Assembly: GCA_001179505.1 (NCBI GenBank)
Contig: CDMY01000405.1
Coordinates: 62,001-126,000 of the forward strand
Source of the DNA: Vitrella brassicaformis CCMP3155
Taxonomy: Eukaryota > Protista > Chromerida
Length of the DNA: 64,000 nt
Reading direction: 5' to 3'
How positions within the stretch are numbered: the stretch's first letter is position 1; each line of letters opens with the position of its first letter. A program made the position numbers and the translations under genes. The notes under the pieces are model-generated. The model searched no databases. It was not told where the DNA came from and saw nothing but the letters and a program-made list of their open reading frames with translations. Of this stretch, positions 11,659 through 20,962 are shown in pieces.

Positions 11659-14600
11659 ATGTCGGCGTTTGAGGAGCTTGGGATGTGTCCCGAGATCATC
11701 CGAGCGGTGCAGGAAGACGACTGGCTCCTGCCCACGCCCGTGCAGGCCGAAGCCGTCCCACTCATACTCGGCGTGAGTGATGGATGCATTGCACACTCGA
11801 CATCAATCATCGGACCTTTCTTCGTGTCGATCAATGCATCTGCCTGCGTGTGATCAACGTACAGGGTGGAGATGTGTGTGCTGCAGCTGAAACGGGCAGC
11901 GGCAAGACGGGCGCATTCGGCTTGCCGTGTCTGCAGATCGTCCATGAGGCCCTCCGCAACAAGGCCATCACATCCATCAGTGAAGCCAGGGCAGCCGGCG
12001 GAGGTCAGCCATCCCATACAGACAGTCAGTATCCGTGTTGTCCTCTCCTCTCCATGCCACGGATGGCGTCGATCAATCCATCAGGTGCCGCTGGGTCAGT
12101 GTCGGTTCGGTTGAGTGTGGACGACAAGGATCCGTATGTGTTGGTGACTGAGGACGGGCTGGAGGCCAAGTCGGACGACGAGAGGAGGTGGAACGGCATA
12201 AGGGGGACCGTCGAGATACTCAACGGCAAATACCAGGTACGGGTGGGCGGAGATGAGATGGGTGTCTGTGTGATGTGCACACACACGCAGTCTATGTGTC
12301 TGTCTATGTATGTGTCGGTATGTCCGTTTGTCATGTGTGCCAGTATGAGGTGGAGATCACGACGGAGGGTCTGGTGAGGGTGGGCTGGGCGACCAGCATC
12401 GCGGGCCTGGAGCTGGGCAAAGACGACAAGTCATTCGGATACGGCGGCACCGGCAAGAAGAGCTGGAACAGGTCAGCTCAGCTCAGCTCAGCTCACTGGT
12501 GGCGGCCATGCACAGTCAGGAAGCAATGACAGGACAGTGCAGCCATCTCTCCATCTGTCTCTCGCTCTGTGTCTGTGTGTGTGTGTGGTTTGGCAGGTCG
12601 TTTGAGGACTACGGCGGGCCCTTTGGGAAGGGCGATGTGATAGGCATGCTCCTCGACAGGGACGCCCAGACGGTCGCCTACACCAAGAACGGCAACCACC
12701 TCGGCATTGCCTACAACATCCCCCCTCAGCTGCACCACACCCCTCTCAAGCCTGGCGTCTGCGGCAAGAAATTCCAGGTGAGTGAGGATAGATACCACAC
12801 AGATGCATCACAGATGGACGACAAGACACCAACCCAAGAAAGACATCTTTCTTCCTTTGGTTCTTTATTGCCTGGCTGCCTAGGTTCGTTGTGTGTTTGA
12901 CGCGCTGTCGTACCCCGTGGCTGGCTACACGCCCCTGGCCCAGATAGACCCCTCACACACGACCGAGGGGCTGGCGATGGGGATGGACACGGCCGGCAAG
13001 GGGGCGAGGCCGCCGCTCTGCCTCATACTCGAACCCACACGAGATCTCGCAGACCAGACCTACAAGTGCATGAAGCTCTTCGGTAGACGTCAGACAGACA
13101 CACAGACAGACAGAGTGAGACAGAGATTGTGATGTACACGTGTGTGTCTGTCTGTTGATGTGTTGTTTTGTTTTTCTGTGGTGTGTGGTGGTGTTGTGTT
13201 GTGCAGGCAAGTATCTCGACGCGCCGGCCCCCCGTATCGGTCTGTTTGTGGGCGGCATCGACGAGAAGAAACAACGGGAAGACCTGCAGAAAGGGGTCGG
13301 GTCAGACACCACAACAGCACAGACAGACAGACAGACAGACAGACAAGCGAGCACGTCTCGTCTCGTCTCGTCTCGCCTCAAGCCCCCGCCCCCCCCTCAC
13401 CGCCCCGCACCCCTTCAGGTGGACATATGTGTTGGGACTCTGATGAAGACGATGGACTACGTCCGTCGGGGCCAGCTGGACGTCTCAGGCCTCAAGTTCC
13501 TCGTCCTCGACGAGGCCGACGACCTCATGAAGAACGACGACCGGCGGGACATCCCCAAGCTCAAGAAGATGGCCCAGGAGAGGCAGAAGACCCGAGTGCA
13601 GACCCTCTTCTTCTCGGCCACGCTGCACTCGCCAGAGGTGCGGCAGGCCATCGAGAGCATCACCGTCAGGCCAACCTGGGTGGACCTCAAGGGGCGGCCG
13701 TCCATTCCCGACACTGTCCACTTTGTGGCCTACACGATCGACCCTAACAAGGTGGTGGGCGAAATGAATGGACTACTGGCTGTGGTGTGTGTGTGTGTCA
13801 CTTTCATGTGTGTTGGGTCTTCTGTGTGTGTGTGTGTGTGTGTGTGTGTAGGGTCTTGCGTTTCGGCCAGTGAACGAGGCTGTGCGGCCGACGACAGACG
13901 GTGTGCACGCCCGCGACCCGCCGTCAGGGCCGCTGGGGTGCTCACAGCAGATCAAAGAGATGAAGCCACAGGTAATTACCGAGTGAACGAGATGGAACCC
14001 ATGATGACAGGTACCATATGCAACCTGTGTCGTGGGTGTGCAGGTGTTGGTGAAGCTTGCTGATACGTTCAAGATGGAGAGTTGTCTGGTCTTCTGCCGC
14101 ACCAACGTCGACTGCGACAACCTCGAGAAATTCCTCAACTCTCTCGGAGGCGGCAGGGGATTCGCAGGTACGCGCGATTGCACCGACTGACATGCAGAGG
14201 CGCCTGCCTGCCGACTGATGGATGGATGATGGATGGATGGATGTGTGTGTGTGTGTGAGTGAGCGTAGGCAAGGCTGAGTCTGGCAAGGAGAACCCCTAT
14301 TCGTGTGTGGTGCTGGCCGGCATGAGGGACCAGCAGGAACGACAGAGGAACCTCGCGGTCAGTTACCAGGCCACTGGCCACACGCACATCGGTCACTCCG
14401 CGCCACCCACCGTGTTTGTCCGTCTGTCTCTGTGCGTATTTGCAGCACTTCAAGGCAGGTGATGTGCGTTTCTTGATTGCCACCGACGTGGCGGCGAGGG
14501 GCATCGACATCAGGGTACGTTGGAATATGGGCATAGCGGAATACACACACCAGCAGAGCAGAGCAGCAGCCGACAGACGGGTGTGACCATTGCGCCTCTC

Positions 14601-15728
14601 CCTCCCCCAGGAGCTGCCCTTCTTGGTGATGCTGACGCTGCCCGACGACCCCAACCAGTTCTTCCATCGCGTCGGTCAGTCATCAAGCCAGCAGAGACAA
14701 CACGAGAAACCTCTCCCATGTGTCACTCTGTGTGTGTGTGTGTGTGTGTGTGCAGGTCGTGTGGGCCGAGCTGACCGGATGGGCCTCGCCATTTCTATCG
14801 TCGCCACCGAGAAGGAGAAAGTCTGGTCGGTTCGCCCGATGGATACGGCAGACACCGAGCCACACACACACACACACACACACGTTGTTTGCCTGTGTGC
14901 AGGTACCACAAGTGCCCCAACAGGGGTCGAGGATGCACCAACACCAAGCTGGTGGAAGAGGTAGGTACCCACATACGCGCAGGATGGGCGGCGTGTAAAT
15001 GGTGCTGGGTGGTCTGGTCTGACCTCATCAGGGTGGGTGCACCATTTGGTACGACGAGCCCACATACCTCAAGGGTCAGTCGGTCAAGCCGCCTCATATG
15101 CCTACGATCAATCTACCGACCATCCCTCCCTCCCTCCGTCCTTGGTGTGTCCGTTGTGCAGAGATCGAGGAGCGAGTGGGTCAGAGGATCGCCGCCATGC
15201 ACCCCAGCAACTTCTCCGTCAAGGGCGTACTCGACCCACTCGGCGCCGAACAAGCGCACCACAAAGATGGTCCGCCTGTCGGCATGAGCGGCTTCTCATT
15301 GACCAACAGACACTCTCAGCTCTATGCCTGTGTGTGTGGTGGTGCAGATGGCCGTTCCAAGCGTCACAAGAAGGAGCACGTGAGCGCACCGGTGGCCGGA
15401 CAGGCCGGTGAGTGAGTGAAGCGAGTCAAGTCAAGGCCGGCGACACACAGCCATACACACATGGCTTTGGACGCTCGTGTGTGTGTGTGTGTGTGTGTAA
15501 AGGCGGCATGTTGATGTACGGCAAGATGAAGGACGACCAGAACACCAAAGCCACACTCAAGCACCTGCAGGTCAGCCGGTCGGCCGTCACGACTCCTTCA
15601 TGTGCTCAGCCGTGTTGTTTGTGATCTCTGTCTGTCTGCAGGAGTTGTCGCCAGCAGTGGGCGAGCTGCAGCAGCTGGAACGAGTCATACAGCAGAGATA
15701 CGTCACTCTCGCCGGCAAAGGAATCTGA
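11659..15728 (+). CDS. DDX1: DEAD-box RNA helicase DDX1 with SPRY insertion (multi-exon)
   Basis: [54 protein letters not shown]-type segment (GLVRVGWAT...[11 protein letters not shown]...[12 protein letters not shown]), [28 protein letters not shown] and HRVG|[13 protein letters not shown]. Stop at 15726-15728. Confidence 0.95.
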
Positions 15729-16087
15729 TGGACAGATGCATTGCATGGAGGCCCAGGCAGCAGAAGGATCTATTTGTCGTGTGTGTGCGGTTGGCCATCC
15801 ATGACGCGTGCGTGTCGCTTTATTAATTATCGATAATGTAAGCATCCGAGCGTCTGTCAACATCCATGGTGACAAGAACGTTGATTGAAACGCATTATTT
15901 GTGTCAATAATGTCCGACAGACAGGGCCCATAAAAGGCCCGCACAATCGCCCTCACTGTCATTGACATCCATCCTCCCACTGGGAAAAACCAAACCACTG
16001 ACTCACTGCACTGGCACACCACCACGACAAACCACTCACTCATTGACCACACACCCCACACCCACACGCCAAGTCATCGACCCTATC

Positions 16088-19000
16088 TTATCTGTATTCC
16101 ACCTGCCGCTCTGCAGCGGCCGTGCCCTCCCCTTCCCCCTCGTCGACCTCCCACCGCCAGCCGCCCTCCGGCCCACCAGGCAAATCGTCAGCCCCCTGCC
16201 ACTGCAGCATGCCCCTCCTCTCATCGCCGTTGACCCGAACGAGCATCTCGTCATCGTACAGGTGCATCAGGTCCTCGTCTTCATCCTCAAACCACGATGA
16301 GCCCCTCCCGCTGCGCGTCCGCCCCAAGGGGAGGGTCTCCAGTTGTTGGTCTGTGTCTTCTGTCGGCCACCGACCGGCAGGTATTCCGACAGGCCCCCGC
16401 TGCTGAGGCTGTGGTGGCCGTGGTGGCTTCCGCGACATCATCTCCTCGCCCATCTGCTGCAGGACGACCTCAGCTGCAGCACTGTAGATGTCGTCATAGG
16501 CTCGGTCAAAGGAAGTCGTCTCGCGATTGGCAAGAGCATCAACCCTATCAGCCGCATCTCCGTCAGGGAAGCGGTCGGCCTCCATTGGTGAGTGCGGTCC
16601 AGTCCAGAAGGGCAGAGAAGGTTGGGAAGGCCGGCCGTCTCGTTCCATTATCATCCCCTGCACAAGAACCTCATCCACGTCAGCCGGCTCGAAGGCCGGC
16701 AGAAGCGGGTGGTCATCTGAGTCAGTAGTGGGCGAAGGTTGAGGTGGGTGGGGAGGGGCAGAGGAAGCAGCGACAGTTCTCTTGACAACGGGCGGGAGAT
16801 CCAAGCCGAGCTCCTCGATGTCGTAATCCTCCTCCTCTCGGATGGCCTCATCGTCCGCCTCGCCGCCCTCTTGACCCCCACCAGCTCTCTTCCGTGCGGC
16901 GACTGCAGTCTCCGTCTCGAATGGGTGCGGGTTGCCTTTGCTGAGCTCCTGCTCGACGACGGCGTCCATCACTCCACTCAGGTCGACTCTGTGCTCCGCC
17001 ACCCGGCTGACCACGATGGGCTCCGTACGGACGCCAGAGACATCGACGCCTGCACACCAAAGAGAACCGTGGTGGATACAGGCCAGGCATGTGTCGCCTG
17101 TGCTCACACACGTACCAGTGAAGAAGTCCACTGTCGCATCCGATGACGACAGGATCGCCCTGGCCGGCACGGAGGCCACCTCCCCCCCTGTACCTTGCCC
17201 CTCGACGCCCCCCGCACCCCGCCCCCTCCGTGCGCGCCTGAGGGGGACCTCGTCATCCAGCGCCATGCTGTAGATGCCGTCGCTGCCCACCAGGTCCTCA
17301 TCCTCTAGAGCCGCTGAGGGGGCGGGGGGCGACAGCGGCACGTCGATGGACCCGGATGACGGCTGCGAGAAGGGGGAGGGCGGGAAGAAGTCGGGAGGCT
17401 CGTCAAGGGCGGCCGCCGCCAGGGGCCGCTGAGGCAACACGTCAAAGTGGAGCTGACACAGACACAGAGGGATAGGTGGGTACGTTCCTTCACTGCTGAG
17501 CTGATTGATGTGTGGCCATTGGCGTATATTCATTGTGCTCTCTCTCTTTGGTATACTATGGCTACCGGTGGGTGTTTCCACTTGAGGACGCCCTCTGCCT
17601 CTTTCTCTTTCCGCACTGGCGGTGTGGGGATCTCCGTTGTGTCAGGGGTGGAGGGGGCCTCTCCTGGCGTGGCCATCGCCCACGGCACGGCAGCCATCAC
17701 GTCTGCAGCCGACGGACCGCTGTCACGGTCGCTGTCAACATTTTTGGTGCCGTTCCGTCGTGCAGGCTTCTTCTTGGGTGCAGGGCTCTCTGGTGGCTCC
17801 ATCCGGGCTGCCTGGCTCTTGGCGCTGACACAATGAGCGGCACACACAAACGAGTCAGATGAGTGAGTGTCTTGTGTGCTGGAAGGAGAATGACGAGTCT
17901 CGTGCGTCTGTGTCTTACAGCCGCTGCACAGTTGCTTTGTGGAAGGATGCGGGGTCCGTCGTGACCATGGCTTCGAAGCATGCTTGTGCTTCGAGCGGCA
18001 CTCGCTCCTCCGGGAGACGCCGCATGGCCACGGGTGGCAGCTGGTACATTGCACCCCTGCCGCCCTCTGTGGGCAGCCAAACCTGGGCAGAAACACACAC
18101 ACAGACAGAGAGGGAGATGGGCGCCAGTCTGAAGGCAGCCGGCTGTCTGCTTATTCCATCCTCGGTTCGGTCGCTCACATCTGCGAGAGGTTCGTCGCCG
18201 AGATGTGTGGCTTTGTCGAAGAGGCCGATGCTGCCCTTGTAGGCCTTGGACACGCTGTCCTGCGTCTCGACAATCTCCACATAGCACCCGCACTCCAGCT
18301 CAGAAAGGATGGCCTCGCCTACACGTTGGTTGACCAAACCAACGACACACAGAACTTGGTCTCTCTCACAGACTGCTGTGCGTGTGAACCGGCTTACCGT
18401 CTGACAGTATGGGGCCGTTTTCCACGAGTGCGAGAGTGGTCTCCATCTCATGGGCTGGCACCGGCTCTGGCTGCAGGAAGACATGGCTGCCCCTGATGAA
18501 GTAACAGAATCACACGCACACACGCACACAGGAATGGCATGTGATTCTCTCGTGTGGGTGGTTGTTGTTGTCTGTCTGTCTGTCTTACTGCGTCACATCT
18601 GTTCCCCTGGGCACCTCCCTCTGCTCCATGCCCACCACCTCACGAGCAAACCGCATCCGCAGCAACTCACGGTACACCTCAGGACTCATCAACGCCTTGA
18701 CGTACACCTGACACACAACACACAACACACACACTCTCATTCCATACGCAACGGTCGATCTCTCTCTGCGGACTTACCCGTCCCGGCTCGAACGCCTTGA
18801 GTTGCACTTTCGGTTTGCCCGTCGCCGGGAAGTTGACCCTGCCTCTCGTAGGATAGACGCAGTCAAAGACCCTCTCCTCCAGCAGACTGCCCTTGCGGGC
18901 CACCTCGGCAATGAGCGACTCGCGAAAGGAATTCTCCCGGTTGGCACCCACAGACACGCAATACCACTCCGGCTCGTCAGTGGTCGGGATGAATGGGCTC

Positions 19001-19293
19001 ATGCGGTTCAGAAGGGCGGTGTCGATGTAGTCGCCCTTCTGCTTGCGGGCCGAGAGCACTGACGGACGCCGCCGAGGGTCGCTGCTGAGCCGAGTCGGCG
19101 GGAAGGTGAACGCAGAGCGGCCAGCATGGTCTCTGTGAACGGTGTGCACAGGACCTCGCCGCGTCAGATGTCGCATCCGTGCGCCTCTGGAAGCCACCAT
19201 CCGCCCTTTATTGGTGAGGTCTGCGAGCACCAGCCGTCCGTGGCAGCAGATGATGAGGTGATGGATGAAGATGAGGGCGATGACTAGCAGCAT
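16088..19293 (-). CDS. nusG: Nucleus-encoded, predicted plastid-targeted NusG (NGN + KOW) with a long acidic C-terminal extension
   Basis: Signal peptide MLLVIALIFIHHLIICCHG followed by an Arg/Ser/Pro-rich transit-like region. NGN-like domain: EWYCVSVGANRENSFRESL...VFDCVYPT...KVQLKAFEPG|YVYVKALMSPEVYRELLRMRFAREVVG. KOW-like domain: LECGCYVEIVETQDSVSKAYKGSI. Terminal exon ~17450-16088 encodes ~450 acidic residues. Confidence 0.75.
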
Positions 19294-19702
19294 AAAGGGC
19301 GGCAATCCTGCTGAGAGGATCGGCAGCCACAGTGTGAGCGGATGCAGGATGGCTGGCGTTGGCCTCCTCCTGATGACTCCTGCGGAAGTCATCGATGCAC
19401 GCTGACTCAAACACGCCGCCTTTGATGTGCCGAATTCAGCATGATCCTCCCAGCAGATCTTGAACAGCTACGTTCACTGTACTCTGTCCTCACCATTTCG
19501 CTTCCTCTCCAGCTGGAGCCAAGGCGTCAAGCAAGGCATCCTCCGTTTTGAGCTCGCATGGCTAGAGGACATTTCGTGAAACCGCTCCCTAGCCAAGAGA
19601 ACACATCGTAAGGGGAAGGGAAGGGCGGAGGAGAGGCACGCCAGGTTCATCTTTGTACGTGTGAATGCATTTGCAGCCTTAATTCCACTCCACAGACAGC
19701 GA

Positions 19703-20227
19703 ATGTTCGGCCTGGTAGTGCCGAAGCGTCCCCTCCACACGTCGTTCGTGCAGGAGGGAGAGACCCGCTGGACCACAGACATCCCCAGTCCCCACTCCAT
19801 CGCCGAGTTCGTGATCTTCCTCATGCGAGCGCTTCCCAGCGACAGCCTCGGCGTGGGTGTCTACTGGAGCTTCCCGCCCTTCTCGTCGTGGGAGTTCATC
19901 GGTGTGCTAACCAACAGTCAGCCGAGTGAGCTGTTCGACACCGGCTGGGCTCTGAACCCAGAGGTGCGGGGGGTGCCGGTGGTGCGGCTGGGTCTGTCTG
20001 TTGAGGAGGCCGGGCCGCTGCTGGAGAAGCTGCAGACCAAGCCGCCACTCGACACTAAGCGGGAGTTCGCGCAGAAGGTGGCGTTGAATCTGTACCGGTT
20101 TATTGAGTCGTTCAACCAGGGCATGTCGGACGTGATACAGTGCCCGCAGGACGTGCTCGACAGGTGGTACAGGCGGTTCGAGTCCCGTGCTGCTGTCGAC
20201 CCACTGTTCGTCATGCGCACTGAGTGA
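19703..20227 (+). CDS. HIKESHI: Hikeshi/OPI10 (DUF775) family protein, single exon
   Basis: MFGLVVPKRP..., GVGVYWSFPPFSSWEFIGVLTNSQPSELF, LGLSVE, FAQKVALNLYRFIESF and LDRWYRRFE...DPLF are typical family motifs. Confidence 0.92.
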   Translation: MFGLVVPKRPLHTSFVQEGETRWTTDIPSPHSIAEFVIFLMRALPSDSLGVGVYWSFPPFSSWEFIGVLTNSQPSELFDTGWALNPEVRGVPVVRLGLSVEEAGPLLEKLQTKPPLDTKREFAQKVALNLYRFIESFNQGMSDVIQCPQDVLDRWYRRFESRAAVDPLFVMRTE

Positions 20228-20962
20228 CGGCAGAGGAGGGAGGGTGTGGTGTGCGTGCAGCTGTGTAGGGGGCGTGCCTGGCCTGGCTGGTAGATCCGAT
20301 GTCCGTGACGCGCACACAGTGACGAGGGAGGCAGACACAGACATAGATAGATAGACAGACAGACAGACGTGTGTGGGCGGGTCTCGTCGGGTCGGGTCGG
20401 GTGGGTATGTGGAGAGGTGGACCGACACCTGACTGACCTTTTATATCCTGTGCGCATCGTGTGCGTGTGCATGCGCCTGTAGATAGATAGCCCCGTAATG
20501 AATGGCCTTCTCGTTCGTTCGGACCGAACCAATGCTCGTCTCGCATCGGTGATGACTCTCAATGTCCTCGTGAGTATGTATCCCTGACGAACTACCCCGT
20601 GCTGCCCAGCCGCCCTCACCATCAACACACACCACACTAACCACCCAAGCACTCAGTTCCTGAAACATACAGGCAGGAAGGCGGTAGATAAGTCTCCTTA
20701 GAGCAGTGAATCTCACCCACCCAGACTAAAAACACCACAGCTCGAGCTTACGGCAGCGTATGTGTGCTGCGCGTGGCTGATCGAATCAACGACCGAAACA
20801 GAAAGACAGAAAAGCCCCCTCCTCTCCAACCCTCTCGTGGCCTTATGTTGTCGAAAAGTCAGTCAGTCAGTCAGTCGCTGCGTCTCGGATGCAGTGCACT
20901 CAGCCAGGCAGCAGCCCAGAGTCGGTCTGCCATGGCGGACGTCCATCAGGTCAATCCATCAA

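What the first reader, a model, noticed from the sequence alone, without database searches (positions are those of the whole stretch)
16088..19293. Nucleus-encoded plastid NusG with a ~600-aa acidic extension
A bacterial-type NGN+KOW transcription elongation factor sits behind a bipartite leader. This implies NusG acts with the plastid RNA polymerase of a secondary plastid, analogous to plant pTAC13. After the KOW domain the ORF continues for roughly 600 Asp/Glu/Pro-rich residues containing a compact hydrophobic patch (DFFTGTCVSTGDTCLACIHHGSLWCAGVDVSG). Such an extension is not part of canonical NusG.
Basis: partly seen in the sequence, partly recalled or inferred. Interest (0 to 1): 0.7.

Follow-up and report, generated by a model that had tools for sequence, protein, structure and literature searches.

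The report
Divergent plastid-type NusG with orphan tail

Summary
The gene is real. It lies on the minus strand, has 8 exons, and its CDS runs from 19392 to 16088. Spliced RNA contigs from two studies cover the whole CDS. The resulting 896-aa product is identical to the database protein CEM10686.1 / A0A0G4FBV3 (Vitrella brassicaformis, "uncharacterized").

- **NGN domain (aa 141-245):** a remote but consistent match to bacterial NusG. Pfam PF02357 gives E 4.5e-4 and TIGR00922 gives E 3.4e-5, both below the curated cut-offs. All four PDB sequence hits are bacterial NusG, and there is no Spt5-NGN hit.
- **KOW (aa 277-345):** looks like a degenerate KOW. This rests on structure and pairwise alignment only; Pfam KOW does not hit.
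- **Leader (aa 1-140):** a hydrophobic signal-like segment followed by a basic, Ser/Thr-rich stretch. This fits a bipartite plastid leader, but no predictor was run.
- **Tail (aa 348-896):** joined to the core in the mRNA, net charge -49, 11% Pro. An exhaustive HMMER search of aa 465-896 against 1.84 billion proteins found only the protein itself.
22 of its 32 residues come from a 66-nt in-frame intron (17050-17115) that is spliced out.

Nuclear-encoded plastid NusG is already known in plants (pTAC13/AtNusG) and reported in photosynthetic chromists. I rate this a new variant of a known kind, of moderate interest. The scan has no earlier NusG note on this genome.

The parts
15900..19538 (-). 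Transcribed span seen in spliced RNA contigs. The 5' end is at or below 19538. The 3' UTR runs below 16088 and is assembled together with the convergent neighbour.
   Evidence: table 8: X6 record 7 and X7 record 9
18778..19392 (-). CDS exon 1 (aa 1-205): leader plus the N-terminal half of the NGN domain. ATG at 19392; second in-frame ATG at 19293 (M34).
   Evidence: in-frame upstream stop TAG at 19470
19240..19338 (-). Hydrophobic signal-peptide-like or signal-anchor-like segment, aa 19-51 (19-residue Kyte-Doolittle mean up to 2.54). Small residues at -3/-1 (C-H-G|R) around aa 52.
   Evidence: sequence read directly
18973..19236 (-). Basic, Ser/Thr-rich transit-peptide-like stretch, aa 53-140 (K+R 20.5%, S+T 17%, pI 11.8).
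18589..18972 (-). NGN domain, aa 141-245, interrupted by intron 1 (18708-18777). Motifs: WYCVSV, and FEPGRVYV corresponding to E. coli FFPGYVLV.
18589..18707 (-). CDS exon 2 (C-terminal half of NGN).
   Evidence: joints 18705/18776 and 18491/18588
18398..18492 (-). CDS exon 3: acidic NGN-KOW linker.
18017..18318 (-). KOW-like five-strand region, aa 277-345 (exon 4 is 18179-18318, followed by the start of exon 5), interrupted by intron 4 (18083-18178). Y288 and F310 align with E. coli NusG F144 and F165.
   Evidence: no Pfam KOW hit
17919..18082 (-). CDS exon 5: end of the KOW-like region and two predicted helices (aa 353-385).
17566..17824 (-). CDS exon 6: Pro/Lys/Ala-rich, charge-neutral segment (aa 379-464).
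17116..17452 (-). CDS exon 7: first part of the acidic tail (aa 465-576).
17050..17115 (-). Intron 7: 66 nt, GTACGT..GTGCAG, in frame and stop-free.
   Evidence: joint 17048/17115 in X1, X6 and X7; absent from P0001
16088..17049 (-). CDS exon 8: rest of the acidic/Pro-rich orphan tail (aa 577-896) and the TAA stop (16088-16090).
19407..19496 (-). Out-of-frame uORF in the 5' leader (uATGs at 19496 and 19442, shared stop TGA at 19409-19407, 14 nt before the main ATG).
   Evidence: transcript coverage (X6 to 19538, X7 to 19455)

Best explanation
This is a nucleus-encoded, very divergent bacterial-type NusG homologue of Vitrella brassicaformis (CEM10686.1, 896 aa).

Shown here: it is transcribed and spliced as one 8-exon mRNA, and it carries an NGN domain related to bacterial NusG.

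Inferred:
1. The N-terminal hydrophobic segment plus basic S/T/R-rich stretch acts as a bipartite leader that takes the protein through the ER into the four-membrane plastid.
2. There the NGN domain binds the plastid's bacterial-type RNA polymerase (beta' clamp helices and beta gate loop, as in all NusG/Spt5 proteins) and supports processive elongation of the long polycistronic plastid transcripts.
3. The degenerate KOW keeps the aromatic pair that forms the S10/Rho-binding patch in E. coli NusG. Together with the 550-residue acidic, proline-rich, probably disordered tail, it serves as a tether for partners such as the ribosome, RNA-processing or nucleoid proteins. This would be functionally comparable to the extra regulatory regions of Spt5. 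The tail is lineage-specific.
For: - Gene structure and expression: spliced contigs from 3 runs, full length in 2 studies. The model is identical to the database protein. The coding GC1/2/3 pattern holds throughout.
- NGN: Pfam NusG E 4.5e-4 over profile positions 2-80 of 93. TIGR00922 nusG E 3.4e-5 and LoaP E 2e-3. The only PDB sequence hits at E<=10 are four bacterial NusG chains. The exon-1 half alone already gives NusG as the top hit in Pfam, PDB and Atlas.
- NGN plus KOW together: the Atlas model of aa 139-345 against a bacterial NusG cluster gives TM 0.61/0.70 with 177 aligned residues. Both family sets among the 30 nearest models carry PF02357.
- BLASTP against E. coli NusG: 21% identity over 180 aa, running into the KOW, E 0.006.
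- Single-sequence AF2 secondary structure fits NGN plus five strands. The Foldseek top 3 hits are NusG, at weak E values.
- Leader: hydropathy and composition. Phe at +1 is weakly conserved in Vitrella (PMC6668581).
- Context: the Vitrella plastid is transcribed only by a bacterial-type RNA polymerase (PMC5404108). Plant pTAC13/AtNusG binds PEP and plastid ribosomal proteins (PMC9262611). Nuclear NusG genes are reported in photosynthetic chromists (PMC7593976).
Against: - All family scores are below the curated cut-offs (21.1 vs 22.2 bits; 23.8 vs 135.7 bits).
- Pfam KOW does not hit.
- BLASTP and MAFFT disagree on the register of the last KOW strands.
- AF2 without an alignment gave a poor model (pLDDT 37), and searching the Atlas with that model was uninformative.
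- No targeting predictor was run, and the predicted +1 residue is Arg, not Phe.
- No orthologue was found by word searches or a metagenome scan, so conservation of the core and selection on the tail are untested.
- The conserved Tyr of FPGYV is Arg here.
Confidence: 0.65

Rival explanations
1. A NusG relic with a new role. The NGN fold survives, but the protein no longer works as an elongation factor on RNA polymerase. The fast-evolving tail, or a membrane-anchored N-terminus, defines another function, possibly outside the plastid stroma (ER, secretory route or periplastidial space).
For: Sub-threshold family scores and changed motifs: FPGYV becomes FEPGRV, and the KOW GPF loop is lost. No detectable orthologues. 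The hydrophobic segment is long (about 33 residues), so it could be a signal anchor. There is no Phe after the presumed cleavage site.
Against: The whole NGN-linker-KOW architecture, with about 177 superposable residues, is retained. Aromatic residues align with the E. coli KOW binding patch. The basic S/T-rich stretch after the hydrophobic segment is typical of transit peptides. The only bacterial-type polymerase in the cell is in the plastid (PMC5404108).
Confidence: 0.2
2. A nuclear Spt5-like elongation factor, or another KOW protein, for RNA polymerase II rather than an organellar NusG.
For: Feature-based Atlas hits for aa 135-350 include an archaeal Spt5-NGN cluster at 0.84. The Foldseek list contains Spt5 chains after the NusG chains. 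Long acidic regions are a feature of Spt5.
Against: No PF03439 Spt5-NGN hit at E<=1, while NusG models do hit. PDB sequence hits are bacterial NusG only. There is a single KOW-like region. An N-terminal hydrophobic leader is incompatible with a nuclear factor.
Confidence: 0.03
3. The tail belongs to a separate gene or is untranslated, and the long ORF is an annotation or read-through artefact.
For: The tail has no relatives and no recognisable domain. GC-rich genomes give long chance ORFs.
Against: Single spliced contigs in two studies join exons 1-8 in one frame with canonical GT..AG introns. There are 550 stop-free codons. The tail has the same GC1/GC2/GC3 pattern as the core. The independent NCBI model is identical.
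Confidence: 0.04

Closest known systems
Arabidopsis AtNusG / pTAC13 (AT3G09210) and the nuclear-encoded NusG homologues of Plantae and photosynthetic chromists (PMC9262611, PMC7593976)
   Same: Nuclear gene. Organelle-type leader. Bacterial-type NGN plus a single KOW. Presumed partner is the plastid's bacterial-type RNA polymerase.
   Different: AtNusG is about 37 kDa with no long C-terminal extension, and its NGN and KOW are readily recognised. The Vitrella protein is 896 aa and scores below the family cut-offs. It has a bipartite (ER-type) rather than simple transit leader and a 550-aa orphan acidic tail. Orthology to pTAC13 was not tested here.
Bacterial NusG (E. coli b3982; Thermus thermophilus 1NZ8; Aquifex aeolicus 1M1G; chain 8EHQ_G)
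   Same: N-terminal WY(V/C)V strand, F-x-P-G-x-V-x-V strand, NGN-linker-KOW order, about 21-25% identity to E. coli NusG over the core. Aromatic residues align with F144 and F165.
   Different: Bacterial NusG is 170-250 aa. Its extra parts, where present, are folded insertions (for example Aquifex or Thermotoga domain II), not a long disordered C-terminal tail. The Vitrella KOW has inserted loops and lacks the GPF motif.
Eukaryotic/archaeal Spt5 (DSIF)
   Same: Same superfamily (NGN plus KOW). Eukaryotic Spt5 also adds long, charged, low-complexity regulatory regions to the core.
   Different: Spt5 has the Spt5-NGN signature, binds Spt4, has several KOWs, an acidic N-terminus and a C-terminal repeat region, and is nuclear. 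None of these was found here.
Diatom cluster of about 728-aa proteins with SAP plus NusG domains (ESM Atlas cluster, 88 members)
   Same: Eukaryotic (complex red plastid lineage). A long protein that embeds a NusG NGN domain. Second-nearest family set by structure (TM 0.52 by query, 142 aligned residues).
   Different: It carries a SAP DNA-binding motif that Pfam does not find in the Vitrella protein. Its sequences could not be fetched, so the relationship is an untested lead.

Membership tests
NusG superfamily, bacterial-type branch (Pfam PF02357 / TIGR00922) | NGN domain homologous to the NusG N-terminal domain | tested here: met
   PF02357 E 4.5e-4 covering profile positions 2-80 of 93. TIGR00922 E 3.4e-5. 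All 4 PDB hits are bacterial NusG. Atlas structure TM 0.61/0.70. This is a remote homologue.
NusG superfamily, bacterial-type branch (Pfam PF02357 / TIGR00922) | Score above the curated family cut-offs (Pfam gathering score; TIGR00922 equivalog cut-off) | tested here: not met
   21.1 vs 22.2 bits. 23.8 vs 135.7 bits. It is therefore NusG-like, not an equivalog of bacterial NusG.
NusG superfamily, bacterial-type branch (Pfam PF02357 / TIGR00922) | C-terminal KOW domain (five-strand barrel) after a flexible linker | tested here: inconclusive
   No PF00467 hit. Support comes from the 177-residue superposition on a whole NusG, five predicted strands at aa 279-336, and the BLASTP/MAFFT alignments to the E. 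coli KOW, which differ in register at strands 4-5.
NusG superfamily, bacterial-type branch (Pfam PF02357 / TIGR00922) | Binds the RNA polymerase clamp helices and modifies elongation | not testable with these tools
   Needs biochemistry or a complex model with Vitrella RpoB/RpoC1.
Plastid NusG (pTAC13/AtNusG type) | Nuclear-encoded, with a plastid-targeting presequence | tested here: inconclusive
   Nuclear and spliced. Hydrophobic aa 19-51 plus basic S/T-rich aa 53-140 fit a bipartite signal, but SignalP/ASAFind were not available and Phe is absent at the presumed +1 position. Phe is weakly conserved in Vitrella (PMC6668581).
Plastid NusG (pTAC13/AtNusG type) | Orthology with plant/algal plastid NusG sequences | not tested
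   No plant or algal NusG sequence could be obtained. Word searches returned only the protein itself.
Spt5 | Spt5-NGN signature, several KOW domains, nuclear protein | tested here: not met
   No PF03439 hit at E<=1. One KOW-like region only. N-terminal hydrophobic leader.

The most novel reading that the evidence does not exclude
Chromerid plastids use a NusG whose NGN-KOW core has been extended by a lineage-specific 550-residue acidic disordered tail. The tail would act as a scaffold on the plastid RNA polymerase, convergent with the regulatory regions of Spt5. It could recruit RNA processing or poly(U) tailing, ribosomes or nucleoid proteins, and so stand in for part of the PAP shell of plant PEP. 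Together with the diatom SAP-NusG proteins, this would mean that complex red plastids commonly use enlarged, multi-part NusG factors. It would also give a handle for looking for an equivalent factor in apicoplast transcription.
Probability: 0.15. Interest if true: 0.6.

Novelty: new variant of a known kind. Interest (0 to 1): 0.35.

Why it matters
Transcription elongation in the plastids of chromerids, dinoflagellates and apicomplexans is almost uncharted. The library held no paper that links NusG with the apicoplast.

A NusG-type factor in Vitrella, the closest photosynthetic relative of apicomplexans, gives a concrete candidate partner for the plastid RNA polymerase. It also gives a starting sequence for profile searches in Chromera and apicomplexans.

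The orphan acidic tail, three times the size of the conserved core, is an unusual elaboration of the only transcription factor family shared by all domains of life. The basic idea, nuclear-encoded NusG serving plastids including those of chromists, is already published, so the gain is incremental unless the tail proves functional.

Tried and rejected
- **Tail word search:** the 497-aa genomic tail ORF found nothing. The full-length protein lies outside the tool's length range.
- **Core word searches:** aa 130-360 searched alone found nothing, and searched as a region of the full protein found only the protein itself.
- **Exhaustive phmmer of the tail:** only the protein itself. This used the only job of that kind, so the core could not be searched exhaustively.
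- **Metagenome scan with aa 135-350:** 138 pattern matches, none confirmed.
- **AF2 without an alignment:** poor for the core (pLDDT 37) and for the tail (pLDDT 43, mostly coil with a few helices). Low confidence here does not prove disorder.
- **Fold searches with the poor core model:** Foldseek against PDB put NusG chains on top, but only at E 0.02-0.06. The Atlas shape search with the same model was uninformative (TM below 0.4).
- **Bacterial NusG set:** fetched via E. coli nusG, it returned only 92-100% identical Enterobacterales. That is too uniform to serve as an alignment for folding, and an alignment made of NusG would have biased the model anyway, so I dropped it.
- **Atlas search of the tail:** no usable hit.
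- **Other checks:** Rfam on the window gave nothing. There are no tandem repeats in the tail.
- **Supplements:** PMC7593976 and PMC6668581 held no entry for Vitrella NusG or this accession. Data Set S1 of PMC7593976 is not held.
- **Rejected readings:** Spt5, and a separate tail gene.
Full report
**What is in the sequence**

The finding lies on the minus strand of a GC-rich (about 60%) eukaryotic window with short GT..AG introns. Reading the three minus frames gave a candidate multi-exon gene.

Public runs settled the structure. Contigs of runs X6 and X7 (two different studies), and fragments of X1, lie on 15900-19538 with seven skipped segments. All seven have CT..AC ends on the plus strand, which is GT..AG on the minus strand.

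The CDS exons, in plus-strand coordinates, are:
- 19392-18778
- 18707-18589
- 18492-18398
- 18318-18179
- 18082-17919
- 17824-17566
- 17452-17116
- 17049-16088

The introns are 66-113 nt and about 50% GC, against about 63% in the exons. The spliced product is 896 aa.

An exhaustive HMMER search with the tail returned one protein, P0001, also 896 aa. It is letter-for-letter identical to my spliced model. It is CEM10686.1 / UniProt A0A0G4FBV3 of Vitrella brassicaformis CCMP3155, named only 'unnamed protein product / uncharacterized protein'. This confirms the organism named by an earlier scan note.

The joint 17048/17115 is present in X1, X6 and X7. It removes 66 nt (GTACGT...GTGCAG) that happen to be in frame and free of stops. 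The mature protein reads ...DFFTG-VDVSG.... Run X8 covers introns unspliced and looks like DNA or pre-mRNA, so it says nothing about intron retention.

**The core (aa 141-345)**

*Exon 1 alone.* The half-NGN in exon 1 already gave NusG as the best hit in three tools:
- Pfam: E 0.086.
- PDB: Aquifex 1M1G at E 0.066 and Thermus 1NZ8 at E 0.44.
- ESM Atlas features: 27 of 30 nearest clusters carry NusG.

*The spliced protein.*
- PF02357 NusG reaches E 4.5e-4 at 21.1 bits, with aa 142-235 matching profile positions 2-80 of 93. This is just under the gathering score of 22.2.
- TIGR00922 nusG gives E 3.4e-5 and LoaP gives E 2e-3. Both are far below their equivalog cut-offs.
- Spt5-NGN does not appear at E<=1.
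- The only four PDB sequences at E<=10 are bacterial NusG proteins.

*Structure.* The Atlas's own ESM model of aa 139-345 superposes on a 183-aa bacterial NusG cluster representative, with TM 0.61 by query and 0.70 by target over 177 aligned residues. That length requires both the NGN and the KOW part to match. Both family sets represented among the 30 nearest models carry PF02357. As a control, the same search with the tail gave only unrelated families at TM 0.21 or below.

*Pairwise alignment.* BLASTP against E. coli NusG, fetched from NC_000913.3, gives 21% identity over 180 residues at E 0.006 and runs into the KOW. MAFFT gives 25% identity. The conserved positions are:
- W-Y-x-V, the first strand.
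- F-x-P-G-x-V-x-V, corresponding to E. coli FFPGYVLV.
- F310 opposite E. coli F165, in both alignments.
- Y288 opposite E. coli F144, in the BLASTP alignment only; MAFFT places a gap opposite Y288.

From my own knowledge of the E. coli literature, F144 and F165 lie in the KOW surface that binds S10 and Rho. That point is recalled, not tested here.

*Weak points.* Pfam KOW does not hit, and the two alignments differ in the register of strands 4-5. AF2 without an alignment was poor (pLDDT 37), although its secondary structure is beta-alpha-...-beta-alpha followed by five strands at aa 279-336. Foldseek with that model put three bacterial NusG chains first, at non-significant E values of 0.02-0.06.

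My reading is that the NGN is a real, remote, bacterial-type NusG domain (about 0.85). The KOW is probable but degenerate (about 0.7).

**The leader (aa 1-140)**

- aa 19-51 is strongly hydrophobic, with a 19-residue Kyte-Doolittle mean up to 2.54. It is the only such segment in the protein.
- It ends in C-H-G, small residues at -3 and -1.
- aa 53-140 is basic and Ser/Thr-rich (K+R 20.5%, pI 11.8).

This is the pattern of the bipartite signals that chromerids use for plastid import. The missing Phe at +1 is not disqualifying, because Phe is weakly conserved in Vitrella (PMC6668581). No predictor could be run, so targeting remains an inference.

The 5' leader holds an out-of-frame uORF that ends 14 nt before ATG 19392. 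Which ATG is used is open.

**The tail (aa 348-896)**

The tail is joined to the core in the mRNA. It shares the coding GC1/GC2/GC3 pattern of the core: 0.73/0.51/0.72 against 0.66/0.43/0.75.

Its composition is D+E 18.8%, P 11.3%, net charge -49, with an almost normal residue entropy. It has no tandem repeats.

It has no detectable family or relatives:
- No Pfam family at E<=1.
- No relative of aa 465-896 among 1.84 billion representative proteins.
- Nothing in the word search.
- No Atlas match.

AF2 without an alignment predicts mostly coil, with helices at about aa 353-385, 603-612 and 742-780 and a small hairpin near aa 855-877. Since the core also folded badly in this mode, this is only weak evidence for disorder. 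The tail is a lineage-specific, probably largely disordered acidic extension. Its function is unknown and my scaffold proposal is inference.

**Context and mechanism**

The Vitrella plastid genome is transcribed only by a bacterial-type RNA polymerase, and transcription is polycistronic (PMC5404108). A phage-type polymerase serves the mitochondrion. The plastid is therefore the only compartment where a bacterial-type NusG has a partner.

In Arabidopsis, pTAC13/AtNusG is a nucleoid protein that associates with PEP and with plastid ribosomal proteins S5 and S10 (PMC9262611). Wang et al. reported nuclear NusG genes in Plantae and in 'various phyla of photosynthetic chromists', and proposed that they serve PEP (PMC7593976). 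Their species table is not held in the library, so I cannot say whether Vitrella was included.

**Comparison and novelty**

The kind (nuclear-encoded plastid NusG) is known. This member is unannotated, unusually divergent, uses an ER-type leader, and carries an orphan tail nearly three times the length of the NGN-KOW core.

The Atlas lists a diatom cluster of about 728-aa SAP plus NusG proteins as the second structural neighbour. This hints that enlarged NusG proteins may be common in complex red plastids. I could not fetch those sequences, so this is a lead only. No paper in the library links NusG with diatom plastids or the apicoplast.

I rate the finding a new variant of a known kind, interest 0.35.

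**Limits**

- The core was not searched exhaustively, so absence of orthologues in Chromera, dinoflagellates or apicomplexans is not shown.
- Targeting and all interactions are inferred.
- All laid runs were contigs, so they cannot give transcript ends, strand or expression levels.

Noticed in passing
window 11700-15400 (+) and 15400-16088: A DDX1-like helicase gene (DEAD box with an inserted SPRY domain) converges on the NusG-like gene. The RNA contigs of X6 and X7 run on for about 2.5 kb past 15900, so the two convergent 3' ends overlap or abut and were assembled into one contig.
   Followed up: partly
window 19594-20300 (+): A Hikeshi-like gene (PF05603 plus PF21057) diverges from the NusG-like gene. 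Its contigs start at about 19594-19596, only about 55 bp from the 5' end of the NusG-like contig (19538). This suggests a very short bidirectional promoter region.
   Followed up: partly
window 19407-19496 (-): An out-of-frame uORF (29 codons, with an internal second ATG) in the 5' leader ends 14 nt before the annotated start codon. It could shift initiation to the next in-frame ATG at 19293.
   Followed up: no
window 17050-17115, 18493-18588, 18083-18178 (-): Three of the seven introns have lengths divisible by three (66, 96 and 96 nt). The 66-nt intron is also stop-free, so its retention would give an in-frame 22-residue Cys-rich insert. Whether it is ever retained is unknown.
   Followed up: no
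ESM Atlas cluster, not in the window: Diatoms have a cluster of 88 proteins of about 728 aa that combine a SAP motif with a NusG NGN domain. I found no paper describing it.
   Followed up: no
same genome, other pieces (scan notes s1-218422 and s1-227160): Earlier scan notes describe a sigma-70/AP2/ferredoxin-reductase-like fusion and a leader plus KOW plus helical-repeat protein in Vitrella. Together with this gene they suggest that the plastid transcription and RNA machinery of this alga is built from unusual fusions.
   Followed up: no
window introns, e.g. 18711-18734, 18511-18530, 18085-18121: Short (AC)n/(TG)n-type microsatellites sit in several introns. They produce the CVCVCV/THTHTH runs seen in many spurious ORFs across the window.
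   Followed up: no
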